DNA of 64,000 nt from Okamejei kenojei. Lineage: Eukaryota. The notes beneath the pieces were generated by a model, which made no database searches, was not told where the DNA came from, and was given only the letters and a program-made list of their open reading frames with translations. The position numbers and the translations under genes were made by a program. This document shows, in pieces, positions 1 to 21,762 of this stretch. The DNA lies in NCBI GenBank assembly GCA_035221665.1, contig CM069148.1, positions 26,164,001 to 26,228,000 on the forward strand, written 5' to 3'. Numbering within the stretch: position 1 is the first letter of the stretch; every line of letters starts with the position of its first letter.

Positions 1-142
1 AATTCTGATGGGACATGCAACGTGACCACTGAAGTTCGACTGGAACCTCGTGTAGAAGATATTGGCAGCAGTTTTGAATGCCGGGTGACACACAAGGCAT
101 TTCCAGAGCCATACACTGCGAAAGCTGCAGTGACTTTGAAAG
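1..142 (+). CDS. NCR3LG1: NCR3LG1/B7-H6-like gene: membrane-proximal IgC1 exon (5' part outside the window)
   Basis: Frame 1 reads NSDGTCNVTTEVRLEPRVEDIGSSFECRVTHKAFPEPYTAKAAVTLK, i.e. C1-set D-G strands (N-x-DGT-x-N, F-x-C-x-V-x-H). Phase-1 donor AAAG|GTCAGT at 143. The tail-to-tail position next to KCNJ11-ABCC8 matches human NCR3LG1; orthology rests on synteny and similarity. Confidence 0.75.
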
Positions 143-1905
143 GTCAGTTAGTTTTAGTTTTGGAGATACAGTGTGGAAACAGGCCCTTCAGCCCAATGAG
201 TCTGCTGACCAACTATTTTCCATACACTAGTTCTATCCTACATATTAGGGGCAATTTACAGAGGCCAATTAACCTACAAACTTGCATGTCTGGAATGGGG
301 GACAAAACCGGAGCACCCAGAGGAAACCCACGTTTGTACGGTCACGGGGAGAACGTACAAACTCTGTACAGACAGCACCCGTAGTCGGGATCGAACCTGG
401 GACTCTGGTGGTGTAAGACAGCAACTCTACCGCTGTGCTGTAGTGTTCTTTCTATTTTTTAATGAAAAGTTGAAATTTCAAACTTTTGGTTACGTTCAAG
501 TTGAGGGGTAGAGCCACGGAGTAATCCAGCACGAAAACAGGCCCTTCAGCCCAACTCATTCGTGCCGACTAAGACGCCCCATCTCAGCAAAGCCTTTTGC
601 CCGCGTTTGCCCTCTAACCCTTTCCTCTCCACGTACATATCCAAATGTCTCTTAAATGTTGTGATAGTACCTGCCTCAACTACCTCCTCCTGCAACTCGT
701 TCCATATACCCACCACTCTGTGTAAAAAAGGTAGTCAGGTTCTAATTAAATCTTTCCCCCCTCACCTTAAACTTGGGATCCGAAGTGACCTTTAGGATGT
801 GTGGAAAGTTGTAACGTGGGGTAGTCATACAGTTGTTCAGCAAGGAAACAGGCCATTCAGCCCAACGTCTATACCATCAAAATCCCCATCAAGTTTGTCC
901 CATTGGCCCACATTTGGTCCTTATCTCTCTGACCCTTTCCCATGCAAGTATTTGTCCAAAGATCTGCTAAATGTTATTATTATATCTGCATCAGCTACCT
1001 CCTTGTGCTGCTCATTCCATACCACCACCACCCTATGAATAAAAAAGTTGCCCCTCAGGTTCCTATTAAATCTTTCCATCTTACCTTAAACTATGTTCTC
1101 TGGTTCTTGATTTCCTACCCTGGGTAAAAGACATTCACCCTTTCAATTCCCCTCGGGATTTTATACACCGCTATAAGCTGAAGATAAAACAAGTATGATT
1201 TTTTAAAAATAGTTTGATAAAGGCTTTTTAAACTGAGTATTTTTATAGAACAATTATGCTAACCCAAACTCCTTTCTGCTAAATCTGTCCATGAACCTTT
1301 TTCTGCTAAATCTAAATACATCTGTAACTATAATTATCTTGTCAAAGTGTTGAGTATTTATAACTTCAATAACTTTTTTGATAAACAGTAAGTTTCACAT
1401 CCTAAGTAAAGAATTTTCTTCTTTTCTCTTTATTTCTTGTTACCTTTTATCAATGGTTTTTAAATTCTCCCGTGTGGAAGAAATTTCCTCTTGGTCACTT
1501 CCGAGTCTTTTCCCGAACATGTTCAGGCTTTTAAAAGTAGATGTGAGCGGTTAGTTCTGTACCATCTTCATCAGTTCATAAGTCATAGGAGCAGAATTAC
1601 GCCATTCTGCCCATTGAGTCTACTCTGCCATTCAATCAATCATGGCTGAGCTAGCGCTCAACCTCTCAACCCCATTCCATCTCAACCCAATTCAACTGCC
1701 TTCTCCCCATAACCTTTAATGTCTTTACTAATCAAGAACCTGTCAATCTCCACTTTAAAAATACCCAATGACTTGGCCTACACTGCCATCTGTGGCAATG
1801 AATTCCATAGATTTACCACCCTCTGGCTAAAGAAATTCCTCCTCATCTGTTTTCTAAAGGTACGTCTTGTAATCTTGTCATTTTTTTTGCACTTTTGTAT
1901 TACAG

Positions 1906-2022
1906 AAGCAGAAATTCATCTGTCCATAAGCTCAATAGTTGGAAGCATCATTGGAAGTGTAATTTTTTCTGTAATACTGTTAGCGGCTGGAATTTACCTG
2001 TACATGCGGCACATTTATAAAG
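1906..2022 (+). CDS. NCR3LG1: B7-H6-like gene: transmembrane exon (117 nt, phase 1-1)
   Basis: Polypyrimidine tract + TACAG acceptor ending 1905. Encodes EAEIHLSISSIVGSIIGSVIFSVILLAAGIYLYMRHIYK (hydrophobic helix followed by R/H/K). Donor AAAG|GTAATG at 2023. Confidence 0.85.
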
Positions 2023-2139
2023 GTAATGCTTATTTACTGTGGATGAATTTATAGAAAACGATTCAAAGAATCTTAAGTTATTTGGCTGGGGTACAATTAA
2101 ATCTTTTTGCCTTCATGCTAATTTTAGTTTCATGTTTTA

Positions 2140-2960: not shown

Positions 2961-5900
2961 AAAATAGTAAGATTAAATGAGAACTTACCAGTTTGAAGTT
3001 TGATCCTTATTTTATGAGGAGTTACGATGAGGGATTTTGTGAAGACCCCGCCAGCACGCATGCGCGACATTCTTCAAAGCAGCGGTGTGAAATCAGAGAT
3101 AGTAGCACTGACTGGAGATAGTAAGATTAAGAGAAGTAATATACCAGTTGTCCTTATGATAGAGGGTTGGGAGCGGAGGGCACGAAATCCCTCATCGTAA
3201 CCTCATAAAATATGGATCAAACTTCAAACTGGTAAGTTCTCATTAAATCTTACTATTTTACTTCGGAGTCACGTGAGTGACTTCGTGAAGAATTCAAAGC
3301 TCTGTGGTTTCATGCCCTGGACCACGTCCATGCTCACACACTGCCGTAATAGCTGATGGAGGAAGTATGTTAACGTATTTCAGATTTGAAACAGAGCTGA
3401 AAAACAATAATGTATTTATTAATACAAACAAAAACCCCTGACTTCGGGGAACGTTTAGGGAACAGAACTTAAAACGCGGGAGCGCTCACAGGTTTATTAT
3501 AAAACCGTTGAAATGTGCCTTCATTGGCCCAGCCCGCTGTTGCGAGGACATGATCCATGGGTACCTCCATGGTCCTCGCCACTGATGTGGACGCAGCCCT
3601 GGTAGAATGAGATTTGAAAATATCAGTGTCTACCCCTGCTGCACCCAACACCACCCTGAGCCACCTGGAAATAGTCTGCACAGTTACCCTGTAATGTGGG
3701 CGTTTAAAACTGATGAATAGACCTGTTTCCATTCTCCTTATATTTTGGGTGACATTAATATAATGTCGGAGATGGGTGGCTATACAGAGGCGTATATCAA
3801 TGGGATATGCATGGAATTAAAATTTAAGATCGGTTGTTCCATGTCTATGGTGTTTAAGTAATTCATCAATGAAAAAGGTTACCTTGGTGGGGGTCGAGAC
3901 CATCCTGTCCAGTTTTAGTTTGTGGAGGGTCTGGACCCGCTGAGCTGTAATAAGTGCCATAAGCATCACCACTTTGTAGGTGAGTTTTGCCAGTGGGAGT
4001 TCCGAAACTGGTGACCAGCTCCTGAGTAGGGACAACACTACCCCAATATCCCAGGTCATATTGTATCGTGGTCTTGGAGGGTTAGAATGGAAAATACCCC
4101 TCATGAGTTTCGACACCAACTGATGGGATCCTACTCCGATAGTGAGGTAGGACGATAATGCGCTTCTAGCACTATTGATGGCACTATAGCTGAGGCCCTC
4201 ATCATAGTGAAGGCCCGTGAGGAATTCCAGCACATCTGTGATGGTGGCAGAGTCGTAGGTGATATTAGTCCTGGAACCGAAGGCCTCTCATTTCCTTACA
4301 TGGGTAAGGTATTGCTTCCTTGTAGGCCATGACTATATGGTTTTGTCTTCATAGAGACGCCAACACTGGTTTTAATATTTTAGTAAATAACCTGGGGGCT
4401 GTTGTAAGTCCATTAGGCAATGCTTTATACTGCCACAGCTGCCCCATCCAGACAAATTTTAAATATCTGCGTATAGGTACTGAATAGTATGCATCTTTTA
4501 GATCGATGCAGGCCATGACGTACCCTCTGGAAATCAGTTGCTTGGCAGTTTCAAATGTTTCCATCATGAAATGGGTTTGTTGCACAAAAGTATTCAATTG
4601 AGTTAAATCAATTATGATACGACATCCACCATCTTTTTTGGTTTTGGTAAAGATGTTAGATACAAATTCAAGAGGTTCATGTACTGTTTTCTCTATTACC
4701 CCCTTGGTATATAACCTTAATAGATCTGCATGTCCTTCCACTTTCTCTTTTGTGAGAAAGTACAAATTTCCGGCTAGGTACATGTTGAGCTGGGGGAAGT
4801 TGTCTGTTTATAAATTCAATTTCATAACCTTGAATACTGTGCAATATAAAGGGGTCAGAAGTTATGGAACTCCATGCATCCTCAAACAGACACAATCTAC
4901 CTCCCACTTGTGAGGTTATGCATGCAGCATTCCAAAGGGAACCAGACCCCCTTACCTCCATGGTTACCGGTGGGGCTTGGTCTCCTGTCCTTTGTACTTG
5001 GGTTGTTGTGGTGCTGTGGTGTGGGGTTGACGCATTTTCCATGCTGGTTGCTGTGGGCCTTGGCCTAAAAAAGACCTCTGATGATAAGGCGCGACCTTTC
5101 GGTTTGCACCCGTCACTCTATCGGGTTGAACCCGGAGCCTGTTAGATGTTGCATATGGATGCTACCGACGATATGCTGGAGGTCTGCCAGAGGAAGGCGG
5201 TTTTATCAAGCCTACCGCTTTAGCTTCCTCGTCTAGGTCTTTCACCTGTTTGGGCAGGTCATGACCAAACAACTGTCTTGGTGGTGGCGTAACGTTGGCC
5301 TTACATAAACCCACAAATTTGGGGTTGATTGTAGGACAGATAGAGCTTTTCCGGAAGCAATTGATCTCATATTGCGTATTACAGAGCAGGGCTAATGCAT
5401 CCGGCTGCTCTTCCGTCATGTCCATACCGTCGACTGACCTGGCAAACGCAGTGATGCCTGAGATCAGTAGTTTTAGGATTTTTTGAATTTTTAATTCCTG
5501 TGCCCTTTTCCCAGGGCTAATGTTCCCCCATATGGGTGTGTTCACGGTAGGGACATTCAGCAACACACAATTTTCCGGGGCCATGTACTTGCTTGTGGTC
5601 TCCGAAATTACTTGTTCCTGTAATTGGTGTGTTGTCAGGTAGCTTATGCTTGCCGCTAGCCTTGGCTGAAGAGGTTGCCCTTTCTGGGATGGTTGAGCGA
5701 ACTTAGACACCATCCCCAGAAGTTCCTCTTCTTGCATCCCTTGCAACTGTGGGTCTTCAGTCAACCCCTCTTCGAAGTCAGCTAATCCTTGACTTCTTGC
5801 GCTCCCTACTGAGGAGGGAGAGATGTTGGACAGTCCTGGTAATGGGCCTGTCGTGGACCTGCGTGATCCTTGGGACGCATGCTCCTGCTGGAGTAGGTCT

Positions 5901-7939
5901 CTCTGGAGTAGCTGCTCCATCATCCGCTCCGTATCAGCAATGCGACCGCCGTCGCTATCTGCGAACGGCAAGTCGTCTTCCCCAGATTCTGATGAATCTA
6001 TGGGGCTCTTACCGCCAGTCCGCACCTCGTCGAGGTGATGTCAATGGGACTGATACGGTAGATAGTCGGTGCTCGCCGCTCCAGCTGAGCTACACGACTC
6101 CCGCGTGGATCTGCCACTTGTCTGCGGTCTTTCGGACTGAAGCGGTGGAGAGTCGGTGCCCGCCGCTCTTGCGGGGCTACACGAATTCCTGGTAGATCCT
6201 TGTGTGTGGTTTTGCCATCGGTCCGCAATCTAGCGAACTGAAGTGGTGGAGAGTCGGTGCCTGCCGCTCCAACGGGGCTACACGACTTTTGTGCGGTTTT
6301 GCCACCGGTCCACCCTCTAGCGAACTGATGCGGTGGAGAGTTGAGGTGTGCCGTTAAACCGGACCCTGCCTTCCGCACTTTTTTGCCGCTGGTCCGCCTT
6401 CATACAGACTGAAGCGGTGGGGAGTCGGGGTCTTGGCTACCCAGCTCCCGCGCGGTCCTACCGCCAGTATGCAGCTCCCTGGACTGCTGCGGTGGAGAGT
6501 CGGGTCCTGCCGACTGATCGGGGCTCCCCGACTTCTGCGCTGTTTTCCCGGCCCGAGGTACGGGTGCTGCCGGCTCTACGGTCAGCTCCGGGGATGTTGG
6601 CCGCCGACCTCGCTCTGAAGTCCCGCGGTCTTGAAAGGCATGCTTGGACGCGGCCTTCTTTTTACTTCTTCTCTCCATCATGAAGTTTCTGTAGGGATTT
6701 AATCAACAGAAAACTAACCCTCAAGGTAGCAATGTTACAAAATTTTGAGATTTTAAAAATCAAGTCTGCAATTTATCGCATCAGATAAAGCATAAAAAGA
6801 AGTTTAATTTGACACCTAATTCACTTTCATATCATCAGTATTAAAAAGGTTATGGCCATTTTCATACTCGGAAATTAGCATCTTGTTCCCCATTGCCTTT
6901 CCATTGACTTAACTCAAAAGCTGTGATCTAGAACAGTCAAAAGCCCATAACTTTCTTAAAAATTAAGAGAACTGAATGAAATTTTCAGTTATTATAGATT
7001 GAAGCATTCTGAAACAAATATGAAACAATCTTACTTGGATGACCTGAAATTAAAGCATATAATTAGTTAGTTATCTAATTGTAGCTAATTACAAAATTCA
7101 ATTACTAGATCTAAACATCTATCCATTTCTTAAGAAAAGATAAACTTTTTAAATTGCCTAAGTGTCCAAATAACATTCACACAATAATCTACAATATAAC
7201 ATGATTTTAAAATCTCATTTTCATGAATTTATAGGCCAAATGGAAGGAATTTAGTGTTTAATGCCTGTAAATTAATGGCCATTTAAATCAACTAGAGAGT
7301 GGGTTTTAGTGGAACGCGGTGGATTGGAACATTGTGGTTTGCGGTGAATTTAACCCACAGTCGGTATGAAAAATACAGCCAGTTCATACATTTTTTTTGT
7401 CCCCTTTTCGCAACATGAAAATTTGATTAAATGCTTCCTAAGAACCACGTTTTTCTGTAAAAATAAACTGTGTACCTTCTTTTATCGCCTACGTTAGGTC
7501 CATTCTGCTGGTGGCGTTCAGAGCTTTAGAAGATGATTTTTAAACTAGTTAATAAATAAACTAGTTAATAAATAATCTAGCGTAGTTTAAAAATAGCTTC
7601 ATGAATGAAATGTCGGAGCGATTTCTCTTTAGCGACGAAATCCCCCGACATGGATCGATTTGGACTGTCTAGGGAAAAACGGCATTTTAAACCCGCCCCC
7701 CTCTGAAAGGCGCCAAAGCCGCGCACACGGGGAGTGGCAGAACAGCAGCGCCGCTAAAGGTAGGTATTGTAACATACCTACTCGAGGTTAGTAAAAACTT
7801 ACCTGAAGGGTCCTTTTAAGCTGCCGGCAGAGGAGCTGCGCTCCCCCCCAGCTTGTCGAATGCAATGCGAGCGATGATATGTCGCGCATGCGTGCTGGCG
7901 GGGTCTTCACAAAGTCACTCACATGACTCCGAAGTAAAA
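2961..7939 (-). mobile_element. DIRS1-type tyrosine-recombinase retrotransposon, copy A (degenerate, internal pol deletion)
   Basis: Contains gag (6681 to ~4964), RT (VGGRL, IDLKDAYY, LPNGLTTAPRLFTK; 4349-5042) and YR (SHSTRAAS, AGW..TFQRFY; 3469-4233). ITR ~3038-3070 is complementary to ~7879-7911; the internal complementary region ~3186-3290 is complementary to both termini. Confidence 0.92.
6727..7780. mobile_element. Non-autonomous TIR DNA transposon inside DIRS copy A
   Basis: TIRs TAGCAATGTTACAA / TTGTAACATACCTA; flanks CTCAAGG / CTCGAGG; homologous to 28516-29995. Confidence 0.8.
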
Positions 7940-8422
7940 TGATAGAAAGGATAGACAGTTGGAACCTTTTTCCCTGGATGGAAATGTCAGAGACTAGAGG
8001 GCAGAGATTTAAGGTGAAAGGGGCAAAGTTTTAAATATATGTGCGGGGCCAGTTTATTTTACACAGTTTATTATGGGTACCTGGAACCTGCTGCCAGGGA
8101 TGGTGGTGGAGGCAGAAACAATAATTTTAATTTTAGAGATTTTTAGATAGGCACATAGACATGCAGTGAACGGAGGGACATGGATCATGTGCAAGCAGAG
8201 GAGATTAGTTTAACAACATTATGATGGGCACAGACTTTGTGGGTCAAAGGGCCTGTTCCTGTGCTATGCTGTTCTATGACTATAAGTATTGGTTTAATTT
8301 GATATTCATCACTCAGAAATGCTGATACCTCTATAAGAATTAATATCCTCCATGCACTTAGTGCCATGAAATTGTAGGTGCAGTTTGATACAAATGTTTG
8401 TATTCATTAAACATTTTCTTCT

Positions 8423-9461
8423 AACTTCAGAATGGCAGGCAGTGACTAGTAGGGTACCGCAAGGCTCGGTGCTGGGACCGCAGCTATTTACAATATACAT
8501 CAATGATTTGGATGAAGGGAATCAAAGTAACATTAGCAAATTTGCAGATGACACAAAGCTGGGTGGCAGTGTGAACTGTGAGCAGGATGCTATGAGTATG
8601 CAGGGTGACTTGGACAGGTTGGGGGAGTGGGCAGATGCGTGGCAGATGAAGTTTAATGTGGATAACCTTGTGAGGTTATCCACTTTGGTATCAAAAACAG
8701 GACAGCAGATTACTATCTAAATGGCGTCAAGTTGGGTAAACGGGAAGTACAACAGGATCTGGGGATCCTTGTTCATCAGTCTATGAAAGTAAGCATGCAG
8801 GTACAGCAGGCAGTGAAGAAAGCGAATGGCATGTCGGCCTTTATAGCAAGAGGTGTCGAGTATAGGAGTAAAGAGGTCCTTCTGCAGTTGAACAGGGCCA
8901 TAGTGAGGCCACACCTGGAGTATTGTGTGCAGTTTTGGTCCCCTAATTTGAGGAAGGACATTCTTGCTATTGAGGGAGTGCAGCGTAGGTTCACAAGGTT
9001 AATTCCCGGGATGGCGGGACTGTCATATGCTGAGAGAATGGAGAGGCTGGGCTTGTACACTCTGGAGTTTAGAAGGATGAGAGGGAATCTTATTGAAACA
9101 TATAAGATTGTTAAGGGTTTGGACACGCGAGAGGCAGGAAACATGTTGGGGGAATCCAGAACCAGGGGCCACAGTTTAAGAATAAGGGATAAGCCATTTA
9201 GAACGGAGACGAGGAAACACTTTTTCGCACAGAGAGTTGTGAGTCTGTGGAATTCTCTGCCTCAGAGGGCGGTGGAGGCCGGTTCTCTGGATACTTTCAA
9301 GAGAGAGCTAGATAGGGCTCTAGTGGAGTCAGGGGATATGGGGAGAAGGCAGGAACGGGGTACTGATTGAGGATGATCAGCCATGATCACATTGAATGAC
9401 GGTACTGGCTCGAAAGGCCGAATGGCCTACTCCTGCACCTATTGTCTATTGTGTATTGTCT
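8423..9461 (+). mobile_element. 5'-truncated CR1-clade LINE (RT C-terminal half and 3'UTR)
   Basis: VPQGSVLGPQLFTIYINDL, SKFADDTKLGG, RPHLEYCVQFWSP, RTRGHSL; (CTATTGT)n tail. Confidence 0.92.
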
Positions 9462-10197
9462 AACGCATGACAGTTGTGAATTTTAACATTAGAGCAGTTC
9501 ACTTACCTTTGATCTAATTCAATATCCTTATAGGTCTGAAGTTATCTGTTAATAATGAAGACAATGTTAGACTAATCTAGATGGCAGACCTGAAATGGAA
9601 ATTAAATAAAATAAGAGGATTTCACAATTAAATCTGAGCCTTCACTACATAGAACATATAACAGTACAGGAACAGGCCGTTCAGCACATAATGCCCGTAC
9701 AAAACAAGATGTCAGGTTAAGCTACTCTCCTTTGCTTGCGTTTGAGCCATAATCCCTTCACTAAGACTTCATCATTCGAACTGATAGGAATTTTCAGGAA
9801 AAGGCAAAGCTAATCTGCACAAATGCACTGAGTCTTTGGCCCAGAGTAGGGAAATTGAGAAACATGAGGACATAGTATGGAGGTGAGGGGGGAAAGATTT
9901 AATAGGGACCTGAGGGGCAACATTTTTGCACAGAGGGTGGTAGGTGTATGGAATGAACTGCCGGAGAAGGTAGTTGAAGCAGGTATTACGACAATGTTTA
10001 AGAAACATTTAGACTGGCACATGGCTAGGATAGGTTTAGAAGGATATGGGCCAAACGCAGGCAGGTGGAACTAGTGTAGATGAGGCATGTTGATTGGCAT
10101 GGGCAAGTTGGGCCGAAGGGCCAGTTTCCACGCTGACTATGACTATAATTGGAATAATCCATCTTTAAATTTCTAATTTTCTTTCATTTATTCTCAG

Positions 10198-10611
10198 TTC
10201 CACCCAATGTATGTGATTTTCAGATGCCTGCTCGATTTATCCATCAACAACCTGCAGAGATTACCTGCCACGTGTCTGGATTCCGGCCTGCAGTCATTTC
10301 TGTTGGCTGGTATTTGAAGAGAAGGAATGATGCTGAGGAGACCTTTATTGGTGAAAGCAAAGGGGAACAGTGGACTATATGGTTTGGCAAAGCAAAGGAG
10401 CTAACAGAAATGGGAAAGAAGAATGCAACTGACGTTAATTGGAAAGTCAGACAAAGTCGTTTTGTCGTACATGATGATGGAACACAGAGCTTTTCCAGCA
10501 CTCTTGAGATTTATCCTGACTTAATGGAGGACAATAAAGCAGAAATCAGATGTAGAGTGTCGTATCCAACTGGAACTCAGGAGAAACGCACCTGTTTACA
10601 AGTTGATGGAA
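10198..10611 (+). CDS. NCR3LG1: B7-H6-like gene: post-TM IgC1 exon 1
   Basis: Acceptor TTCTCAG|; VPPNV..ITCHVSGFRPAVISVGWY..HDDGTQSFSSTL..IRCRVSY; phase-1 donor A|GTAAGC. Overlaps ORF 10224-10697. Confidence 0.8.
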
Positions 10612-11909
10612 GTAAGCATTTTACAGATATGAAGTCATTGCGTAGAAAAAAGGAACTGCAGATGCTGTTTACAAACAAAAAGGACATAAAGTACTAGACT
10701 AACTCAGTGGGCTGGGCAGTATTTCTGATGTTTAGAGTATGGACCCTTCTTCCATCAGGAAGCTTTCTGACCCAAAACGAATGAAGGAGTGTCCCGACCT
10801 GAAACGTTTCCTACCCATTTTGGAAAAAGGGTCCTGGCCAGAAAGATTGGAAGGGTTCCATCCTGAAACAACACCTATCCTTGGCTGAAGAAGGGTTCTG
10901 TCCCGAAATCTTTTTCATCGATGTTCTCCAAAGATGCTGCCTGACCCGCTGAGTTACTCCAGCACTTTGTCTCCTTTTGTTTTAAGTCAGTGTCGGGAGA
11001 CTACAGTATTGCAGACTCTTCTTCAATTTATCCAAGTTGTGGATCACCCATATGGTTTCTTGATTCATTAATTTCTGATTGTATGTCCTAGAATTTACAG
11101 TCTTTTAATTTATAAAACGGAGGTCCTTTACTTGTCACAGAGTTTGTGATTATTCACTGTGAACAGCAAACTATGCAAAAAACCGTTGGAAAATGCTACT
11201 TTCACAGTTAAAGTGATGCATCATTGAGTTATGTAATAGTTCTGCATTATTTGCCTTCGTCTTATAGATGGTTTGGTTTTAAGTATATCCACTGCAATAA
11301 GATAATTTATTTAAAAGCTTTCTTTAGGGGCAATTGTAGCTAATAGTTACTGGTATGGGATCAAAGATGTGGGACTAAAAGATGTGACTAAGAAAAACAG
11401 AAGGCACCTTCAGTTTAAAAAGTTCAGTATTTAAAAATGCACCTGGGACCACGTCTGTAGTGTCTGGAGGACTGGGGAGGAATTGTAGCAGTGAACTAGA
11501 AAGGATTTGTGGACTGGGAATCCCCTTGAAAAATAGTTGTTGGGACACTGAGATTAATAGATTTTTGTTAGGATATTTACATGGATGGCATCTTTTACAA
11601 TTTTTGGGAAACTCCACAGCATTTTTCAGACAGGGAAAAACTTTTGAGATTTAGTTATAAAGTTGGAAACAGTTTATGGCAAGAAGGTACATTAATGGAG
11701 ATATGATATAATCAAAGCCAAAAATTGGTTGAATGTTGGGATTTCCTTGTTTGCTGAATGGTGAATCTTATGCCCAAATTCCTGACAGCCTTTGATAAGA
11801 TTATCTTTCACTAAATTTGCCTTGAAACAGCACCATGGAGTCTGAAATTTACTGCAAGTGAATGAGAAATTACAGCATGAGTATGGGAAGCAAATGGGAT
11901 AGGGAGTAG

Positions 11910-12370
11910 ATAGGTTTAGGCTTATTGTCGGGTGTACCGAGGTACAGCGAACAGCTTTGTTTTGCATGCTGTCCAATCAGTTCATATAATACTGCACATA
12001 AATACAATCAATTCACACTCAAGTACAATAGGTAGAGCAAAGGGGAAGATACAGAGTGCAGAATATAGTTCTCGGCATTGTAGCGCATCTGTTCCATAGA
12101 CAAAGTCCAATGTCCGCTATAGAGTAGAGTTGAATCGGACAGTATCCTTGCTTGTGGAAGAACCATTCTGAAGCCTGATAACAGAGGGGTAGAAGCTGTT
12201 CCTGAGTCTGGTGGTGTGTGCTTTCAAGCATCTGTACCTTAAGAAGAAGGAATGACCTGCATGGGACAAGTCTTTGATTATGTCAGCTGCTTTCCTGAGT
12301 CAGCATGAAGTGCAGATGGAGACACTGGTGGGTAATCTGGTTTGTGTGATGGACTGGGCTGCATCTACAG
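11910..12370 (-). mobile_element. Rex1/Babar-like LINE 3' fragment
   Basis: The - strand encodes RYRCLKAHTTRLRNSFYPSVIRLLN followed by a 3'UTR; a related piece lies at ~22280-22430. Confidence 0.6.
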
Positions 12371-12521
12371 AAATTAAAATGTTACAAGCCTAATATGCAC
12401 AAGTTTATTGCTGACTTGTAAATGACCGTTGCATTTTGTCACTGCTATACGATAGACACACAGCATCTTTTCCTTAAGATTGCGAATGTTAAGCTGATTT
12501 TACTTTGTTTTTTCTCCTTAG

Positions 12522-12884
12522 TTGCTCCTAAGTTGGGGAACATAATCACACCTCCTGTTGTGCGTCACAACACTTCAGTGAAGCTGACTTGTCCAATAAG
12601 TTTTTTCACGCCACGTCCATTAACAATCCGTTGGTATGAAAGAATACATGGGGTAAAATCTCTTTTGCTGGAGCACAACGAGGAATATGCGGCAGAAGGC
12701 ACGGTGGGCCGGTATTCCCACTGTCTGCAGGAGTTTACCTATCCAGACCACACTTACAGCGTCTACAGCATGCTCACTTTCATTGCATCAATTCAAGAAA
12801 ATAATGGAAAAGAATATTTATGTGAAGTGAATCACGTTAGCTTGAGACAACAAGCCGAGAAACGGGTTAAGCTGGAAGTGAAAG
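12522..12884 (+). CDS. NCR3LG1: B7-H6-like gene: post-TM IgC1 exon 2
   Basis: Acceptor CTCCTTAG|; APKL..LTCPISFFTPRPLTIRWY..PDHTYSVYSML..YLCEVNHVSL; phase-1 donor AAAG|GTAACT. Confidence 0.8.
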
Positions 12885-13338
12885 GTAACTCAAACTTAAA
12901 GTCTTTGATTGCGCATTCACTATCAAACGTGTAATTGCCTTAGCTTTGCTGACGTTATTGTGAAATATTTCAGTCAGAAGCATTAAAATGGCCTTCCACC
13001 ATTCATGGGGGAGAAGGCAGGAGAATGGGGTTGAGAGGGAAAGACAGATCAGCCATGATCGAATGGTGGAGTAGACTCGATGGGCCAAATGGCCCAACTC
13101 TGCTCCTATGACTTTATACCCACCACCCTCAGCGTGGAAATGTCATCCCTCTGCTTCCCATTAAATCTTTCCCCTCTCACCTTAAACCTCTGTCCTCTGC
13201 TTCATACACACCTCGAGGGCCTTTCTCCACCTCCCCGGTCCTCAGCGACCACTTCTCAGTCAGCAGCGCCAATGTTTTAACAGCATGACTATATTTTGTG
13301 TTTACAAATGTAGTAAAATTCTATTTTCTGATTTGCAG

Positions 13339-13647
13339 CATATCCTTCACTTGATACCATCCAGAGCGAACCAGTGAATCCAGAAATTGACAAAGAAATG
13401 ACTCTCTCCTGCAGAGTGCACTCGTTTTATCCTAAAGAGATTTCTGTCCAATGGGTCATGGATAAGAAAACCATAAAAGGGAATGAAATATCTGAAATAA
13501 TCGCGAATCAGGAGAAGTTGTATGAATTCACCACGACTTGCACCATAATTCCAACGTTATCAAACAGAGAGAGTAAATATCAATGCTTTGTCACACACGA
13601 GAGCCTTCCAAAGCCAAAGTTTGCGGAATATGTTCCCGAGAATTTAG
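13339..13647 (+). CDS. NCR3LG1: B7-H6-like gene: post-TM IgC1 exon 3
   Basis: Acceptor TTTGCAG|; AYPSL..LSCRVHSFYPKEISVQW..YQCFVTHESL; phase-1 donor TTAG|GTATGC. Confidence 0.82.
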
Positions 13648-15008
13648 GTATGCTTCCTCTCCTTTCAAAGATTGTTTCTGCTATTTACACAATAAGGACA
13701 TTTTTCATTCATCATTAAATTGTGTTCTAATTTCGTAATATTATATTGTCAGCTTTCCGTTATATCATTACTTTTACCTGTACATTTGCTTCTGGTTGGC
13801 AAAAACATTATTGAGTTTAAATGCTGTAATTCCTCATGCTCGAGAACTTAGAACAGTATTCAGTATTCACTTTACTGTCATTTCACTGAGTACTTGCATA
13901 CACAGAAAAAACGAAAAATTGTTTCTCATCAGTTTTGTCATCAGTGCAATTAATAAAAACAGAAATAAATACTTACAAGTTAAAAATTACCATCTCTAAA
14001 ATAGAACTAAAATAGAACTAAAACAGACATTCAGACAGAACAATCGATCCCTAACATAGGAACAATTTAAAGTGCTGTTCAGTGGCTTCGCCTTGACAAG
14101 TGACTAGCTGTCAAGGTGTTGGGGGGGGGGGGGGGCTTAGATGTGGGTGTGTGTGTGTATGGGGAGGGGACACAGTCCCATACATTCAACATAGAACAGT
14201 ATGGTGTGTAGGAAGGAACTGCTGATGTTGGTTTATACTGAAGATGGACACAAAATGTTGGAATAACTTAGCAGGTCAGGCAGCATCACTGAAGAAAAAG
14301 AATAAGTGACATTTTGGGTCCGATGAAGAGTTCCGACCCGGAACGTCACCTATTCTTTTTCTCCAGAGATCCTGATCCGCTGAGTTATTGTTTTAGAACA
14401 GTTCAGCACTGCAACAGGACCTTCGGCCCACAATGTCAGTGCCAAACCTTTAGTCTTTAAAAATACAGCATGGAAACAAGGCCCTTCGGCCCACCAAGTC
14501 CACGCCAACCAGCGATCACCCCCATAAACTAACACTATCCTACACACTAGGGACAATTTACAATTTACAGAAGACATTTAATGTGCAAACCTGTACGTCT
14601 TTGGATAGTGTGAGGAAATGGAGCACCCATTTTGCCCCCCCTCACAGACCTATGTCCTCTGGATCTTGATTCCCCTACCCTGGCTAAACAACTGTGCATT
14701 TACCCTATCTATTCCTCTCATGATCTTATACACCTCTATAAGATCACCCATCAACTTCATGTACTCCAAGGCATAAAGTCCTAGCCTGCCCAACCTCTAT
14801 AGCTCAGGCCCTTGTGTCCTGGGCTACAATCTTCTTCGTATATAATCTTCGTAAATCTTCTCCGCACCCTTTCCAGCTTTCCAGTTGTTATTTCTAGTCA
14901 ACTTACAAACACTGATTACATCCTCATTGTACAAAACCTTTTCTGGAACATTACCTAAAACGATGTTTTAAGATGCATTTCAGCTTTTCTTATTCCTCTT
15001 TCTTACAG

Positions 15009-15335
15009 TATCTTCTCCCAAAGTAAATAAAATTTCTTGTGATCCTGTGAACCCTGAAGCCGGAAAGACATTGACTTTGTCCTGTGAAATAATGGACTTT
15101 TATCCAGCGAGTATTCAAATTGAGTGGTTTAGGGATGAAGTGAGATTAAATGAAAATACAACATATGTAATCGCTAACGAATTGATGATGAATGAACCTA
15201 GTCTCTACAGCAAAGTCACCAAATTAACCTGGAGGCCAAGCACTCATGATCATCAACATGAATACAAGGTTGAAGTTTACCATTCAAAATCTTCCTCCAA
15301 ACCTCAGAAGCAATGCTTCCAGTTACTTCTTAAAG
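15009..15335 (+). CDS. NCR3LG1: B7-H6-like gene: post-TM IgC1 exon 4 (lacks the F-strand Cys)
   Basis: Acceptor CTTACAG|; VSSPKV..LSCEIMDFYPASIQIEWF..LYSKVTKL..EYKVEVYH; phase-1 donor AAAG|GTGAGT. Confidence 0.8.
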
Positions 15336-17828
15336 GTGAGTTAAGGTTCTCTTTATCAAGCTGTGGTAAAATGAATTCCAGCTGTTATTTGGAAATCATA
15401 ATCAGCCAGAGCTGATTCTAAGACCTGAAAAAGTTAATTGAGAGTTATTTGAGTGTAATAACATCATACTGGTGACTCTTAGAAAACAGCCCTTATGGTG
15501 TTTTCCCATAATAGATTTTGTTTTTCTTTCCTCATAAATTGCATAAGAGCAAGTTTTATTTCATTTTAACGATTTTGGGCCGTGATTTATGAATTTTGTA
15601 AAGGTGAATTACAGAATTCAGACAAAAGGCTGTAACGTGGGACTTTGCTGTAATTTTCTAATGTTGTATTTTTTTAAATTTCTATTGTTTTGAAAAGGAA
15701 TAATTCAATTTTTGGGCAGTACAGTGGCGTAGCTTCTAGAGCTGCTGCCTCACAGGGCCAGAGACCCAGCTTTAATCCTGACCTCGGGTACTGGCTGCGT
15801 GTGGAGTTTGCAGGCTCTCCGTGACTGTCGATTTTGTATGGGTGCTCCTTTTTCCTCCTGCATCCCAAAGACATGCAGATTTGTAGGTTACATGGCCTCT
15901 GTAAATTGCCCCTAGTGTGTAGGGAGACTATGAGAAAGTGGGATAATATAGAACTTGTGTGAATGGTGATTGATGGTCGGTGTGGATTCGGTTGGCTGAA
16001 GGACTTGTATCTCTAAAGTAAACTAAACTTCCCAAACCTCCACCACCTAGAATGACAACACTGGTGGTGTGGGAGCAAATGGAATTCATCTGACTTGGAT
16101 ATGTGCAATAGGGTCATAGTGATACAATGTGGAAACGGGCCCTTCACCCAACTTGCCCACACTGGCCAACATGTCCCAGCTACATGAGTCCCACCTGCCT
16201 CCATATCCCTCTAAACCTATCCTATCCATATACCTGTCTAAGTTTCTTAAACGTTGGGATATTCCCAGCCTCAACTACCTCCTCTGGCAGCTTGTTCCAA
16301 ACACCCACTACCCTTTGCGTGAAAAAGTTAACCCTCAGATTCCTATTAAATCTTTTCCCCTTCACCTTGAACCTATGTCCCCTAAGTGCTGCAATTCTTT
16401 TATTGGAATGGATTATCCCTGCCTGAGTTTGCCACCCACTTGAGACCCACTTGTTGTGCAGAGAGGGCAGTGTGATTCATTCTGCACATAGGTCTCACCA
16501 ATGTTTTTTTTATATACAAAAGGGTTCTGGTACACATATTGCTCCTTGCTTTTGGTGTCGAAAGCAGATTATCATCCAATATGCTGATTAAGAGCCTGAC
16601 CGACTAATGTTATTAATTTGATTCTTTAAACATTTGTAATTTTTTTGTAATATTAAAAATGCTAAAATGTAGTTTTTAACTCTTTAGAGGAGCTGGCAGG
16701 CCATGCTGTACGTTGAGAAATGTGGGCAAACAGGACTAGCCGAAGGGCCTGTTTCCATGCTGTACAGCACTTTGACTATGATTAAATGGTGGAGGAGTGA
16801 CAACTTTTTGAAAATGACTGTGAATGTTTATCCATGTCCCCTCGTCATCTTGTACTCTTACAGATCTCAGCATTGCTTCCTGATTTCTTGGATCCATGAA
16901 AAAAAAAATTCCCCCTTCAACAAGGAGCTTTTATTATATATTCACGGTTTACATAGTATTGCATCATTCAAAACTGCTCTTCATTCAGTTTGCAACACTG
17001 ACCATCAGATTACGACATCATCAGCCCTATCCACGATGCACTCGAGCCTCCCAGGACATCTTGGCAGCTAGTGACAGCTCGGTGGATGTAGAGTACCTTT
17101 AAATTTGTCTGAAATATGTAACGGTTATAAAAATACTTTAAATATATGCGTAAATGACAAACAAATATTAACACATAAAAACTCGAACAAATAATTAATA
17201 CTAAAATTAAAATGCTGAATTTACCTATTACCTATTACCTATTTCCACTAGATTGAAGGGGACAGTTATTCATGTTAGTTTTTCTAGCAAACCTGAGGAT
17301 GAAATACAAAGTGGATTGGATCTATCTTGTCACGCATCCACCATTTAGTCAGAGAGTCGTAGAGTTGGCAAGCGTAGAAACAGGCCCTTCGACCTACCTC
17401 GTCCATGCTGACTAATTTGGAAGTCTGGAAAATCCCATTTTCCTGCATTTGGTTCATAGCCCTCTGAAAATTTCCCTCTCCATACTTCTGTCCAATGTCT
17501 TTTAAAAGTTATAATTACATCCGCTTCTATAGCTTCCGCTGGCAGCTCATTCCAGATATGGTCAACCCTCTGAATTAAAAAAATTGTCATCCCTTTAAGC
17601 CTAACCCGAATGCAGTGGGGGTGCTGGGAGGTGGTGGTGGGCAGTGGAAATAATGGCGTTTAAGAGGCTTTTAAATAGGCGCATGGATATACAGGGAATG
17701 GAAGGATCACATGCAGGCAGATAGGAATTGGTCTTGGTATCGTGATTGACACAGACATTTGTCGGCCGAAGGGCCTGTTCCTGTGCTGTACTATTCTATG
17801 TTTTAAATATATTTTATTTTCTTTATAG

Positions 17829-18137
17829 GCTCACCAACATTTTCAGACTTCAAAATGGTGCCAGAGATCCCATGGTTTGGTGAAAATTTATCCATATCTT
17901 GTTCCGTACATGGCCTCTTAAGAAAGGATTTCATTTTTGAATGGTATAGAGGATCTGAGCCGGTGAAAAATGGAGTAACTAATTCAAATTTTGTGCCTAC
18001 CGGTGGCAATTACAAAGTAGATAGTTGCCTTAAATTTTTAGTAACCGCAGAAGACTTTGAAAGAGAGTTAATCTTTCTGTGTAAAGACCGTTATAACAAT
18101 GAAGCATTCAAAAGGCGTATTCAACTGCCCCTAAAAG
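17829..18137 (+). CDS. NCR3LG1: B7-H6-like gene: post-TM divergent IgC1 exon 5
   Basis: Acceptor TTTATAG|; GSPTF..LSISCSVHGL..FEWY..GNYKVDSCL; phase-1 donor AAAG|GTGAGT. Confidence 0.75.
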
Positions 18138-19346: not shown

Positions 19347-20464
19347 TGTCAAGTCTTTTAATGTTTTTGTGCAGATTCCCCGCTTGAAGGATCTGATTTA
19401 TCCACCCCGATATGATGAACTGGATTTCACTCAATGACCAAACACTTCTTTTCCATTTTTTCCCCATTTTTTCCCCCCCTTTTTATTTTGGCAGATTCAG
19501 CAATTAATTTACAGTTCCACTTGATTTATTGCTTCAGCCATTACTTTGAAGGCATTTGGATGTTGTAGGTCTTAAGGTATTTAACAGTTTAGTCTTTTAG
19601 TAGGTTCAAAACCGGCTGCTAATCAGGTGCTGTAGATAATCAGACCTGTATGCCTTTGCTGGCGATCGCGGCGGTTTTTAGGACAGTCTCTTAGATTATA
19701 CTGTTCAAGTTTTAGCCGCAAGTCAACTTCTCTCGCGGGCCTGTCCGCTTCTCTGTTTCCCTCCCCCCACCGGGTTGACTGTTCCCGGTTGGGCTGAAGA
19801 CTCAGCCTCTGTCGGTGGCTCTCTGGACCTCTCCGTGGCCTTCACGGTACTAGGCCCCCACCCGACGTCTTTGGCTGCTGCTTGGGCCTGGCTGTAGGCT
19901 GCACAGCCCTGGATACATTCCAGACCCTTACTGCCCCTGCTTGTTTTCCTAGCTCTTCCCTGAGCTATTGCTTCCCGTTTTTACCTTTTTCCTTTTTGGC
20001 GCCAATTCAAACCCATTTGGCTTGGTGACGTTCCACTTGTTTCCAAATACTACTATTTTTAACTTTTGTTTTTGATTCTTCTTGCTGGCCTTGTTCTTAT
20101 CTTCATTCTTTTATCCTCGTCGACAATTGTTGTGTATTCGGATGCTTTGAACAGTCTTGAATAAAGGCTCGGGCACGGGAGGAATCATACAAGCTTCTCT
20201 TCTGCAGGACGCCACCTCCAGTCTTTTTCTGCTCATGCGTACTTGCCCCAGACATCACAAGACACCAATTATTTATCCTAATTATCTCATACCTAACACT
20301 CCTCCCCCTTTAACTTGGGGGCAGGTAATAACTTTTCTATTACATACACCGCACTCCTTCCCTTTTCAGTCCATTTCACCTGTACGGTATATGCTCTTTT
20401 CCTACGATTGTGTGCTTGTGATTTTAATTTAGCATTTGTCCTTTCATTACAGTTTGATTTGACA
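19347..20464 (-). mobile_element. 1.1-kb solo-LTR-like element (TG..CA, 5-bp TSD ATAGC)
   Basis: Ends TGTCAAGTC / GATTTGACA; TSD at 19342-19346 and 20465-20469; AATAAA on the - strand near the left end; homologous to 48635-57555. Confidence 0.8.
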
Positions 20465-21461
20465 ATAGCTTTAAAGTGAGAGGGGCAAAGTTTAATGTGC
20501 GAGGCAAGGTTTTTTACACAGTGAGTAGAGGGTGCCTTGAATATGCTGCCCATGGTGGTGGTGGAGGCAGATATGTTAGTGACATTTCAGAGACTATTCG
20601 ATAGGCACATGGATATACAAGGAATGGAAGGATATGGATCACATGCAGGCAGAGGAAATTGTGTTCGTTTTGCATAATGTTCAGCACAAACATTGTAGGC
20701 CGAAAGGCCTGTCCCTATGCTGTACTGCTCTATGGTCTAATCAAAGGTGGGGCCCGACATACTTCTTTGGGGTGTGGGAGAAAACGGGAGCACCTGGAGG
20801 AAATCCACACAGTCTCATGGATAATGTGCAAACTCCACACACAGACAGCACCTGAGGTCAGGATCAAACCTGGGTTTCTGGTGCTGAGGCAGCAGCTCTG
20901 TGTTTGGTAATAGGTCGTTAGTTTGAATTTGGGCCTTGTGTGTCAATATTATTGGCACTGACTATAGAAATAGGGTATCACTGCAAAAAGGGTGGCACCA
21001 TGGGGGGGGGGGGAAGCCAGAAGAGAGGTGGGGGCAGGACAAAGCCTGGCATGTGATAGATGGATATAGGTGAGGTAGGTTTTTGATTGTCAGATGGATG
21101 GACAAAGGCCAGAAATGTAAAAAAAAAGTTTCAAAAGAGGATAGAAGAGGCATGAAATTTGAAGCCAGAGGAAGTAGTGTGGGTGGATGAGAGCAAAGGA
21201 AAGGGGAAAGGAAGAATCGGGTGTGCATCCAGGTGGGGCACAGGGTGGAGAGGGTTAACAAAAAAAGGTGAGGGCAGTAAAAAGGGCAAGGGGTGTTTGT
21301 ACGGTTAATTACCAAAAATTGAAGTTTCCACTGTTCATACCGTTGGGTTGTAAGCTAACCAAGCAGAATAACATTATTTTGTTTGCCCAGGTCATTTTGG
21401 AACATAAAGTACGCATTAATTTAACTTGTATTTGATATTTGTGATTTCAATTTTTCCACAG

Positions 21462-21762
21462 CTGTGGCTCCTAAAGTATCATGTTTTAGCACCTGTGACA
21501 ATGTTCGGCCAAGAAAATATACCCTTACTTGCAAGATTGAACATTTTTGCCCAATGGATATAGAAGTTACTTGGAGGAAGGGATGGAAAGTTTGCACGGA
21601 TGATCAAATTATGAGAAAGCCCAAAATTGAAAAACAGGACTGTACTCTACAATCACAGAGATGCCAATTCTCATGGAAGAAAAATTGGTAAATTATGTTT
21701 GTGAAGTTCGACATGTAAAGACCAATGAAATTGTTGAGAAGCCATTCACACTGGAGGTTTAA
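21462..21762 (+). CDS. NCR3LG1: B7-H6-like gene: terminal IgC1 exon 6 (apparent 1-nt frameshift in the A5 run at 21630-21634)
   Basis: Acceptor TTCCACAG|; AVAPKV..LTCKIEHFCPMDIEVTW. Adding one A restores KTGLYSTITEM..NYVCEVRHVKTNEIVEKPFTLEV* (TAA 21760-21762). Confidence 0.75.

What the first reader, a model, noticed from the sequence alone, without database searches (positions are those of the whole stretch)
1..21762. B7-H6/NCR3LG1-like receptor with six tandem IgC1 domains after its transmembrane helix
Seen: C1 exon, TM exon, then six more C1-set exons (10198, 12522, 13339, 15009, 17829, 21462), all joined by phase-1 GT-AG junctions. I found no stop, signal peptide or second TM between or after them, and basic residues follow the helix (YMRHIYK). 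Known: human NCR3LG1, at the same syntenic position, is a V-C1-TM NKp30 ligand whose tail is Gag-like rather than Ig; C1-set domains are normally extracellular (Ig, TCR, MHC, B7). Inference: a type I receptor with a ~670-aa cytoplasmic C1-Ig array, perhaps an intracellular scaffold for reverse signalling. I have an unverified recollection that cytoplasmic Ig domains were noted for some amphibian B7H6-like genes, so novelty must be checked.
Basis: partly seen in the sequence, partly recalled or inferred. Interest (0 to 1): 0.88.

Follow-up and report, generated by a model that had tools for sequence, protein, structure and literature searches.

The report
B7-H6-like receptor with Ig-domain tail
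This skate gene for an NK-cell-ligand-like surface protein really does carry six antibody-type (C1-set) domains after its membrane anchor, an arrangement conserved from sharks to alligators. It is an unstudied oddity of an ancient gene family, not something peculiar to this genome.

Summary
The exons are real. The window holds the end of an ectodomain C1 exon (1-142), a TM exon (1906-2022) and six C1-set exons, all GT-AG, phase 1 and multiples of 3.

One correction: the sixth exon has a 1-nt frameshift at an A5 run (21630-21634). It gives an in-frame stop at 21689-21691, 71 nt before the ancestral stop at 21760-21762.

A 3882-nt spliced contig from a near-identical skate joins tail exons 1-4. 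Little-skate transcript contigs encode one uninterrupted 949-aa protein that reads C1 | TM | first tail domain. So the TM exon is joined to the Ig exons in mRNA.

The same V-C1-TM-(C1)n layout occurs in sharks, rays, chimaera, coelacanth, bichir, lungfish, amphibians and alligator. There are two ancient paralogue clades.

Indirect evidence fits a cytosolic tail. The canonical disulfide cysteines are invariant in the ectodomain but lost in four of the six tail domains. N-glycosylation sequons sit at chance level in the tail.

A TM-less (secreted) isoform is annotated in a caecilian. Topology and function remain untested.

The gene models are public. I found no accessible paper that describes the tail, and the key 2012 paper could not be read.

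The scan also noted a similar B7-H6-like gene 24 Mb away in this genome (s1-880198).

The parts
1..142 (+). 3' end of the ectodomain C1 exon, truncated by the window edge. The V and leader exons lie upstream, outside the window.
   Evidence: Translation is 45/49 identical to the little-skate orthologue. GT donor at 143-144. Weak Pfam C2-set_2/C1-set match.
1906..2022 (+). Transmembrane exon (117 nt, phase 1-1). It has an acidic N-side flank, about 23 hydrophobic residues with a small-xxx-small motif (GSIIGS), then YMRHIYK.
   Evidence: AF2 of the orthologue gives a helix at 265-284. The exon is present in all skate and chimaera transcript-derived proteins.
10198..10611 (+). Tail domain T1: a C1-set exon (414 nt) with a long, poorly conserved insert between strands C and E.
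   Evidence: Pfam C1-set 32.5 bits. Laid at record positions 1164-1579 of the X1 spliced contig. Low pLDDT in the insert.
12522..12884 (+). Tail domain T2: C1-set exon (363 nt).
   Evidence: Pfam 36.2 bits. Joined to T1 and T3 in the X1 contig. Cys-Trp-Cys kept in 20 of 21 orthologues.
13339..13647 (+). Tail domain T3: C1-set exon (309 nt), the most canonical of the six.
   Evidence: Pfam 52.9 bits. PDB hits to Ig light-chain constant, IgE, IgA, MHC-I alpha3 and UrIg2 domains, down to E 3e-17. Cys-Trp-Cys kept in 22/22.
15009..15335 (+). Tail domain T4: C1-set exon (327 nt) that lacks the F-strand cysteine.
   Evidence: Pfam 43.7 bits. The F-strand Cys is replaced by V/I/M/L in all 22 orthologues. 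Joined to T3 in the X1 contig.
17829..18137 (+). Tail domain T5: C1-set exon (309 nt).
   Evidence: Pfam 23.6 bits. 93/102 identical to little skate. The canonical Cys pair is kept only in skates (3/21).
21462..21762 (+). Tail domain T6: the last C1-set exon, frameshifted. One base is missing at or next to the A5 run 21630-21634. The in-frame stop is TAA at 21689-21691. The ancestral stop at 21760-21762 is reached only in the other frame.
   Evidence: Orthologues are intact and end at the ancestral stop. The X1 contig is colinear with no net indel.
21763..22456 (+). Probable 3'UTR. It contains a repeat copy at 22284-22365 that is shared with the intron at 12132-12214.
   Evidence: X1 record positions 3710-3792 fall on 22284-22366 if the contig is colinear. 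The contig would then end near 22456. No AATAAA or ATTAAA between 21763 and 22800.
36375..37619 (-). Neighbouring gene used as a synteny anchor: an intact inward-rectifier K+ channel ORF (KCNJ11-like, 414 aa), tail-to-tail with the Ig gene.
   Evidence: Pfam IRK (2e-55) and IRK_C (3e-63). That human NCR3LG1 is adjacent to KCNJ11 is from my own knowledge.

Best explanation
This is the skate member (clade A) of an ancient B7-H6/NCR3LG1-like family. Its main mRNA encodes a signal peptide, a V domain, a C1 domain, one transmembrane helix and then six C1-set Ig domains.

By ordinary membrane-insertion rules the V-C1 part faces outward. By homology it is an NKp30-type ligand. The Ig array that starts about 7 residues after the helix then lies in the cytosol.

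The tail domains are real, foldable beta-sandwiches that have been kept one-to-one for more than 400 million years. They evolve about as fast as the V domain and have repeatedly lost their disulfide cysteines.

I infer that the tail acts as a bulky, modular cytoplasmic arm. It would anchor, space or cluster the ligand, or be bound by intracellular partners. The nearest formal analogy is the cytoplasmic FnIII array of integrin beta4. Mammals replaced this arm with a Gag-derived tail.

Shown: the exons, the splicing, the conservation and the C1-set identity. Inferred: the cytosolic location. Guessed: the function.

In this particular genome the last domain is cut short by a 1-nt frameshift.
For: Exons and splicing:
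- Exon structure and Pfam C1-set matches.
- The spliced X1 contig joins T1-T4, with 1163 nt upstream of T1 and about 1300 nt downstream of T4.
- Three full-length and two partial Logan transcript contigs, near-identical to the little-skate RefSeq model, read C1 | TM | T1 without interruption.
- A chimaera UniRef entry (V9K7L7, which I take to be cDNA-derived) has the same layout.

Spread of the architecture:
- 95 of the 150 best 50%-identity cluster representatives hit by T3 have an internal TM followed by 2-14 Ig domains.
- Named examples come from sharks, rays, chimaera, coelacanth, bichirs, lungfish, caecilian, salamanders, frogs and alligator.
- Domains align one-to-one, and the family splits into two old clades.

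Hints about topology:
- Cys-Trp-Cys is kept 22/22 in V and in the ectodomain C1. In the tail it is kept in T1 16/22, T2 20/21, T3 22/22, T4 0/22, T5 3/21 and T6 16/22.
- Sequon density is 1.18 per 100 aa in the ectodomain (shuffle expectation 0.84) and 0.62 in the tail (shuffle 0.62).
- The TM helix is conserved, with acidic residues on its N-terminal side, basic residues on its C-terminal side and a small-xxx-small motif.

Fold and homology:
- AF2 gives T2-T6 a pLDDT of about 90 and a TM helix at 265-284.
- The ectodomain matches human NCR3LG1 structures.
- KCNJ11 is the neighbouring gene.
Against: - No experiment shows the topology.
- C1-set domains are otherwise known only outside the cell or in the ER lumen.
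- T2 and T3 keep their cysteine pairs in essentially every species, which would be easier to explain in an oxidising compartment.
- A TM-less isoform is annotated in Microcaecilia (P0174). A TM-less fragment also exists (P0046).
- For this species itself the TM-to-T1 junction was not seen. Both candidate upstream exons end in AAAG, so the X1 contig does not tell them apart.
- The tail evolves fast: 14 nonsynonymous against 4 synonymous among the 18 listed differences from X1. Here it has also lost half of T6. A tightly constrained scaffold would not be expected to do either.
- The homodimer test gave no answer.
Confidence: 0.62

Rival explanations
1. The TM exon is a cassette. The Ig array works mainly in a secreted eight-Ig protein (V-C1-T1...T6), for instance as a soluble NKp30-family ligand or decoy. 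The TM-containing mRNA would give a membrane form whose cytosolic tail is a by-product.
For: - All exons are phase 1 and multiples of 3, so skipping the 117-nt TM exon keeps the frame.
- RefSeq annotates exactly this isoform in Microcaecilia (P0174 reads ...FTVK | VSPKVSQ...).
- P0046 joins the ectodomain C1 directly to a tail-type domain.
- T2 and T3 keep their cysteine pairs in 20/21 and 22/22 species.
- The protein ends right after T6 with no second anchor, like a secreted Ig chain.
Against: - Every transcript-derived skate protein and the chimaera entry contains the TM exon.
- Nearly all RefSeq models do too.
- The TM segment is as conserved as the Ig domains (0.64 mean identity among elasmobranchs).
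- Four of the six tail domains have lost a canonical cysteine in some or all lineages, whereas the ectodomain never has.
- Tail sequons are at chance level.
Confidence: 0.22
2. The tail is a functionally inert leftover. It was an ancestral tandem duplication of C1 exons that became trapped behind the TM exon, and it now drifts. In this skate it is beginning to decay, as shown by the T6 frameshift.
For: - T6 is frameshifted, probably in an independent transcript too.
- The nonsynonymous-to-synonymous ratio against X1 is close to the neutral expectation.
- The canonical cysteines have been widely lost.
- The number of tail domains varies from 2 to 14 across the family.
Against: - One-to-one domain orthology, open reading frames and confidently predicted folds are kept in more than 20 species spanning over 400 million years.
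- T1-T5 here have no stops and have intact splice sites.
- The out-of-frame half of T6 is still 30-32/40 identical to other skates, so the lesion is recent.
Confidence: 0.12
3. Two separate genes (a V-C1-TM gene and a downstream multi-C1 gene with its own promoter and leader) have been wrongly read as one.
For: An 8.2-kb intron full of transposons separates the TM exon from T1. For this species the junction itself was not observed.
Against: - Uninterrupted transcript contigs in little skate cross the junction.
- The X1 contig has 1163 nt upstream of T1, far more than a leader exon would need.
- T1 begins in phase 1 without a start codon or signal peptide.
- The architecture recurs in 95 of 150 cluster representatives.
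Confidence: 0.02

Closest known systems
Human B7-H6 / NCR3LG1 (ligand of NKp30)
   Same: Type I protein with a V plus C1 ectodomain and one TM helix. The skate orthologue's residues 45-239 match solved human NCR3LG1 chains 6yjp, 4zso and 3pv6 at E about 1e-18. The gene lies next to KCNJ11 (the human position is from my knowledge). NCBI names the thorny-skate and alligator relatives NCR3LG1.
   Different: The human protein is 454 aa, with an intracytoplasmic domain homologous to GAG polyprotein that carries ITIM-like, SH2-binding and SH3-binding motifs (Brandt et al. 2009, PMC2715080). Here the tail is six C1-set Ig domains. I saw no ITIM-type motif in the short juxtamembrane segment, by eye only. 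In a quick tree the window's gene falls in clade A, while alligator 'NCR3LG1' falls in clade B. One-to-one orthology with the human gene is therefore not settled.
Public gene models of the same family (for example thorny skate XP_032894882.1, little skate XP_055505482.1, Callorhinchus LOC103174893/5, Latimeria LOC102345720, alligator NCR3LG1 X1)
   Same: Same architecture and the same exon-for-domain layout. The window's exons are 84% identical to the two skate proteins.
   Different: Those models have an intact T6. Most are labelled 'uncharacterized protein', and no source annotation I saw comments on the position of the Ig domains relative to the TM helix.
Ig heavy-chain constant regions and shark UrIg/UrIg2 (tandem C1-set arrays)
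   Same: Tandem C1-set exons, one domain per exon, all phase 1. T2-T4 hit IgA, IgE, IgM, Ig light-chain constant and UrIg2 C domains by sequence.
   Different: In those proteins the array lies before the TM segment or is secreted, and the disulfides are kept. UrIg2 is VJ followed by nine C1 domains and then TM/cytoplasmic (PMC12227049). Here the array follows the TM helix, and T4 and T5 lack the disulfide.
Integrin beta4 (cytoplasmic FnIII domains) and butyrophilins (B7 relatives with an intracellular B30.2 domain)
   Same: These are precedents, from my own knowledge, for a single-pass receptor with folded beta-sandwich domains in its cytoplasmic tail. The domains are used for cytoskeletal linkage (beta4) or for intracellular ligand sensing with inside-out signalling (BTN3A1).
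   Different: No sequence relationship. This is an analogy of layout only, and nothing here was tested for such a function.

Membership tests
B7-H6 / NCR3LG1 | V-set plus C1-set ectodomain with sequence similarity to human B7-H6 | tested here: met
   Tested through the orthologue. P0191 residues 45-239 match NCR3LG1 chains at E 1.4e-18 to 2.4e-18. The window holds only the last 47 codons of the C1 exon, and they are 45/49 identical to P0191.
B7-H6 / NCR3LG1 | Single-pass type I membrane protein | tested here: met
   There is one internal hydrophobic segment, with acidic residues before it and basic residues after it. The signal peptide is seen in orthologues only. Sequence-based prediction, not an experiment.
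B7-H6 / NCR3LG1 | Genomic position beside KCNJ11 | tested here: met
   A Kir-type ORF lies at 36375-37619 on the minus strand, 14.6 kb past the stop codon. The human arrangement is from my own knowledge.
B7-H6 / NCR3LG1 | Binds NKp30 | not testable with these tools
   No NKp30 sequence of this species was at hand, and the V exon lies outside the window.
B7-H6 / NCR3LG1 | Gag-like cytoplasmic tail with ITIM, SH2-binding and SH3-binding motifs (human form) | tested here: not met
   The tail consists of six C1-set domains. The human tail is described in PMC2715080. This is a mammalian feature, probably not an ancestral one.
Immunoglobulin C1-set domain (PF07654) | Profile match above Pfam's gathering score | tested here: met
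   All six exons score 23.6-52.9 bits against a cut-off of 21.
Immunoglobulin C1-set domain (PF07654) | Canonical B-strand Cys, C-strand Trp and F-strand Cys | tested here: inconclusive
   In the window, T1, T2, T3 and T5 have all three. T4 lacks the F-strand Cys, as in all 22 orthologues. T6 has the F-strand Cys only in the shifted frame.
Immunoglobulin C1-set domain (PF07654) | Extracellular or lumenal location, as in all characterised members | not testable with these tools
   The predicted position is C-terminal to the only TM helix, hence cytosolic in the TM-containing isoform. Indirect signs (cysteine loss, chance-level sequons) agree with this.

The most novel reading that the evidence does not exclude
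The post-membrane C1-set array is a genuine cytosolic module and the ancestral state of the NKp30-ligand family. It would be a fast-evolving intracellular arm that is bound by host or viral cytosolic factors and controls display or clustering of the ectodomain. This is inside-out signalling like the B30.2 domain of butyrophilins. It would be the first case of C1-set domains, the hallmark domain of Ig, TCR and MHC, working inside the cell. Mammals later swapped this arm for a Gag-derived tail.
Probability: 0.15. Interest if true: 0.85.

Novelty: new variant of a known kind. Interest (0 to 1): 0.55.

Why it matters
C1-set domains are regarded as the signature of the jawed-vertebrate adaptive immune system, and all characterised ones work outside the cell or in the ER lumen. 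Here an old, syntenic relative of B7-H6 carries six of them behind its membrane anchor. It does so in cartilaginous fish, lobe-finned and basal ray-finned fish, amphibians and crocodilians.

If the tail is truly cytosolic, two things follow. It changes what C1-set domains are thought able to do. It also suggests that the NKp30 ligand originally had a large intracellular arm that mammals replaced with a retroviral Gag fragment.

If instead the secreted isoform is the working one, the family would include soluble eight-Ig proteins of unknown role.

Either outcome can be tested with simple topology and isoform experiments. As a sequence it is not new: the gene models are public, and this window adds only one more orthologue, with a damaged last domain.

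Tried and rejected
Searches that found nothing useful:
- A size-limited protein search with T1 alone found nothing, because full-length relatives are outside its length range.
- A last search with the thorny-skate protein found no protein of the window's own species and no TM-less skate isoform.

I could not fetch the Logan contigs and rely on their translated proteins and contig lengths.
- I spent it on 9400-15399. I therefore could not lay reads on the TM donor, on T5-T6 or on the A5 run.
- In that call the upstream letters of the X1 contig were not shown. Both candidate upstream exons end in AAAG, so TM inclusion in that contig is undecided.

Tests with no verdict:
- Complex prediction on two copies of T3-T6 of the little-skate protein gave no answer (score 0.00). 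It counts neither for nor against dimerisation.
- Foldseek of the whole AF2 model returned only generic tandem-Ig structures such as titin I65-I70, DSCAM, the IgM B-cell receptor and UrIg2.
- The ESM Atlas gave only Ig-family clusters.

Literature:
- All ten paper searches found no accessible paper that links B7H6 with cytoplasmic or intracellular Ig domains.
- Flajnik et al. 2012 (PMC3709836), Ohta & Flajnik 2015, Ohta et al. 2019 and Flajnik 2018 are not held.

Rejected after checking:
- Cysteine counts per domain are no use as a topology marker, because the ectodomain C1 also has odd counts.

Every search used single exons by reference or database proteins.
- The N run at 25309-25437 was left alone.


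Full report
**1. What is in the sequence**

The window opens inside an Ig exon. Bases 1-142 encode the last 47 residues of a C1-type domain and end at a GT donor. Next comes a 117-nt exon (1906-2022). It encodes an acidic stretch, about 23 hydrophobic residues and then YMRHIYK.

Six further exons follow: T1 10198-10611, T2 12522-12884, T3 13339-13647, T4 15009-15335, T5 17829-18137 and T6 21462-21762. A script confirmed that every internal exon has an AG acceptor, a GT donor and a length divisible by 3. All junctions are therefore phase 1.

Translated one exon at a time, all six pass Pfam's gathering threshold for the C1-set domain. Their nearest solved relatives by sequence are Ig light-chain constant, IgE, IgA and IgM constant domains, MHC class I alpha3 and shark UrIg2.

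All searches used single exons by reference or proteins returned by the databases.

**2. One correction to the observation**

T6 is frameshifted. Its first half reads in the frame of base 21464 and runs into TAA at 21689-21691. Its second half reads in the frame of base 21463. That half holds the C1 signature around the F-strand cysteine and the stop at 21760-21762.

Orthologues have an intact domain ending at that second stop. Compared with them, one base is missing at or next to the A5 run at 21630-21634. The out-of-frame half is still 30-32/40 identical to other skates, so the lesion is recent or an error.

Indirect evidence favours a real lesion. In the spliced contig of run X1, the position of a 3'UTR repeat (record 3710-3792) maps exactly onto window 22284-22366. 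This holds only if T5, T6 and the UTR are colinear with no net insertion or deletion.

**3. Is the TM exon really joined to the Ig exons?**

The run search found a data set (X1, organism A) that holds about the exonic share of the query. Laid on 9400-15399, one 3882-nt contig covers 10196-10611, 12522-12882, 13337-13645 and 15007-15336 as one continuous stretch of the record (positions 1164-2579). Another 1163 nt lie upstream and about 1300 nt downstream, with about 1.5% mismatches. That is a spliced transcript of a very close relative or another individual. The other three runs carried unspliced pieces spanning exon and intron, so they are genomic DNA of relatives.

The letters upstream of T1 were not shown. 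Both the TM exon and the ectodomain C1 exon end in AAAG, so this contig alone does not prove TM inclusion.

The protein databases fill that gap. A cluster that holds the little-skate and thorny-skate RefSeq models also holds proteins predicted from Logan assemblies on contigs of only 3886, 3802 and 3140 nt. Each of these encodes an uninterrupted 949-aa protein. The locus spans more than 21 kb, so these contigs must be spliced mRNA. They read ...AAVTLK | EAEIHLSK...YMRYIYK | VPPNVCD..., that is, ectodomain C1, then TM, then T1. The window's exons are 84% identical to these proteins.

**4. The architecture is old and common**

A search of 1.84 billion cluster representatives with T3 gave 222 proteins at E up to 1e-10. 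Of the best 150, 95 have an internal hydrophobic helix followed by 2-14 Ig domains.

The source names I looked up cover:
- sharks, rays and sawfish
- two Callorhinchus genes (one UniRef entry, V9K7L7, I take to be cDNA-derived)
- coelacanth, bichirs and lungfish
- a caecilian, salamanders and frogs
- alligator, where NCBI calls it NCR3LG1

In a 22-species alignment the domains line up one-to-one.

A quick maximum-likelihood tree (careful search unfinished, midpoint root) splits the family into two groups. Clade A holds the elasmobranchs, Callorhinchus LOC103174893 and Microcaecilia, and the window's gene belongs here. Clade B holds Callorhinchus LOC103174895, second copies in Pristis and Narcine, bichirs, coelacanth, lungfish, salamanders, frogs and alligator. 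Clade support is 99 and 96 SH-aLRT.

AlphaFold2 on the little-skate protein with 33 aligned relatives gives a mean pLDDT of 82.9, a helix at 265-284 and about 90 for T2-T6.

**5. Identity of the gene**

The skate ectodomain matches solved human NCR3LG1 chains at E about 1e-18. An intact Kir-type channel ORF, KCNJ11-like by position, lies tail-to-tail 14.6 kb downstream. This is the arrangement I know for the human locus.

Human B7-H6 differs in its tail. It is a 454-aa type I protein whose intracytoplasmic domain is homologous to GAG polyprotein and carries ITIM-like, SH2-binding and SH3-binding motifs (PMC2715080).

**6. Where does the Ig array sit?**

Nothing here measures topology. The default reading is that a cleaved signal peptide, one TM helix and basic residues on its C-terminal side put the array in the cytosol. 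Three indirect observations agree with this.

- *Cysteines.* The canonical Cys-Trp-Cys triad is kept in 22 of 22 species in both ectodomain domains. In the tail it is kept in T1 16/22, T2 20/21, T3 22/22, T4 0/22, T5 3/21 and T6 16/22. T4 has lacked its F-strand cysteine since before the split of cartilaginous and bony vertebrates.
- *Sequons.* N-glycosylation sequons are enriched in the ectodomain (1.18 per 100 aa against 0.84 after shuffling). In the tail they sit exactly at the shuffled level (0.62 against 0.62). Two ectodomain sites are shared by 15-16 species.
- *The helix.* The TM segment is as conserved as the Ig domains and keeps a small-xxx-small motif.

Two observations pull the other way. 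T2 and T3 keep their cysteine pairs almost everywhere. RefSeq also annotates a caecilian isoform that skips the TM exon and would be secreted as an eight-Ig chain (P0174). A second TM-less fragment exists as well (P0046).

**7. Constraint on the tail**

Among 14 elasmobranchs the mean pairwise identity is 0.63 for V and 0.74 for the ectodomain C1. The tail domains range from 0.51 to 0.65.

Of the 18 listed differences between the window and the X1 transcript in T1-T4, 14 change the amino acid and 4 do not. That is close to neutral, though the sample is small.

The tail is therefore kept as a set of folded domains but is not tightly constrained in sequence. In this genome it has lost half of T6.

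**8. Mechanism**

My best reading (0.62) is a membrane-bound NKp30-type ligand with a large modular cytoplasmic arm made of Ig domains. The arm would anchor, space or cluster the ligand, or serve as a binding platform. The nearest formal precedents, from my own knowledge, are integrin beta4 and the butyrophilins.

The rivals are:
- a mainly secreted eight-Ig product (0.22)
- an inert, drifting tail (0.12)
- two genes misread as one (0.02, nearly refuted)

A homodimer prediction for T3-T6 gave no verdict.

**9. Novelty**

The sequences are public and some carry the NCR3LG1 name, so this window adds one more orthologue. None of the ten full-text searches linked B7H6 with cytoplasmic or intracellular Ig domains. 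The papers most likely to mention it are not held.

I rate it a new variant of a known kind. The chance that specialists have already noted it is substantial, roughly 40%.

Earlier notes of this scan cover the TM exon's three possible products on this same window (s1-880165) and a similar B7-H6-like gene 24 Mb away (s1-880198).

Noticed in passing
window 21630-21634 (A5 run) and 21689-21691: A 1-nt frameshift in the last Ig exon gives a premature stop. Colinearity of an independent spliced contig suggests it is real in this lineage and not an assembly slip.
   Followed up: partly
window 36375-37619 (-): Intact 414-aa inward-rectifier K+ channel ORF (KCNJ11-like) in a 63% GC island, tail-to-tail with the Ig gene.
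   Followed up: partly
window 2023-2054 and 2096: Reading through the TM exon's donor gives ten more codons and a stop at 2052-2054. An ATTAAA follows at 2096. This is a possible short-tail isoform, already noted by the scan as s1-880165.
   Followed up: partly
window 3469-6025 (-) and 49305-56505 (-): Two copies of a retroelement with reverse-transcriptase (RVT_1) and tyrosine-recombinase-like (weak Phage_integrase) ORFs, so DIRS/Ngaro-like. The first is a broken copy inside the 8.2-kb TM-T1 intron. The second is more complete.
   Followed up: partly
window 8385-9370 (+) and 50453-52428 (+): LINE-type ORF remnants. The second has a clear RVT_1 match and is inserted into the DIRS-like copy. 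The first gave no Pfam match for the ORF tested.
   Followed up: partly
window 12132-12214 and 22284-22365: An 82-nt repeat is shared by the T1-T2 intron and the gene's 3'UTR, with 68 of 82 bases identical. Read laying placed the transcript's UTR copy on the intron copy.
   Followed up: yes
window 25309-25437: A 129-N gap flanked by long (GT)n/(CA)n-rich sequence.
   Followed up: no
P0195 (little-skate Logan contig); window 12885-12934: An intron-retaining transcript reads from T2 into the following intron (...KGNSNLKSLIAHS...). The same read-through ORF exists in the window. It is probably unspliced precursor.
   Followed up: no
P0001, P0004, P0037, P0070 (frog and other representatives): Some family members carry 11-14 Ig domains after the TM helix (up to 2158 aa). 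This points to large tail expansions, mostly in amphibians.
   Followed up: no
P0003 (Bolinopsis microptera, 'mucin-22-like', 2018 aa): A ctenophore record with 20 matched C1-like stretches ranks third among the T3 hits. It is odd for a domain thought to be restricted to jawed vertebrates. Contamination or convergence was not examined.
   Followed up: no
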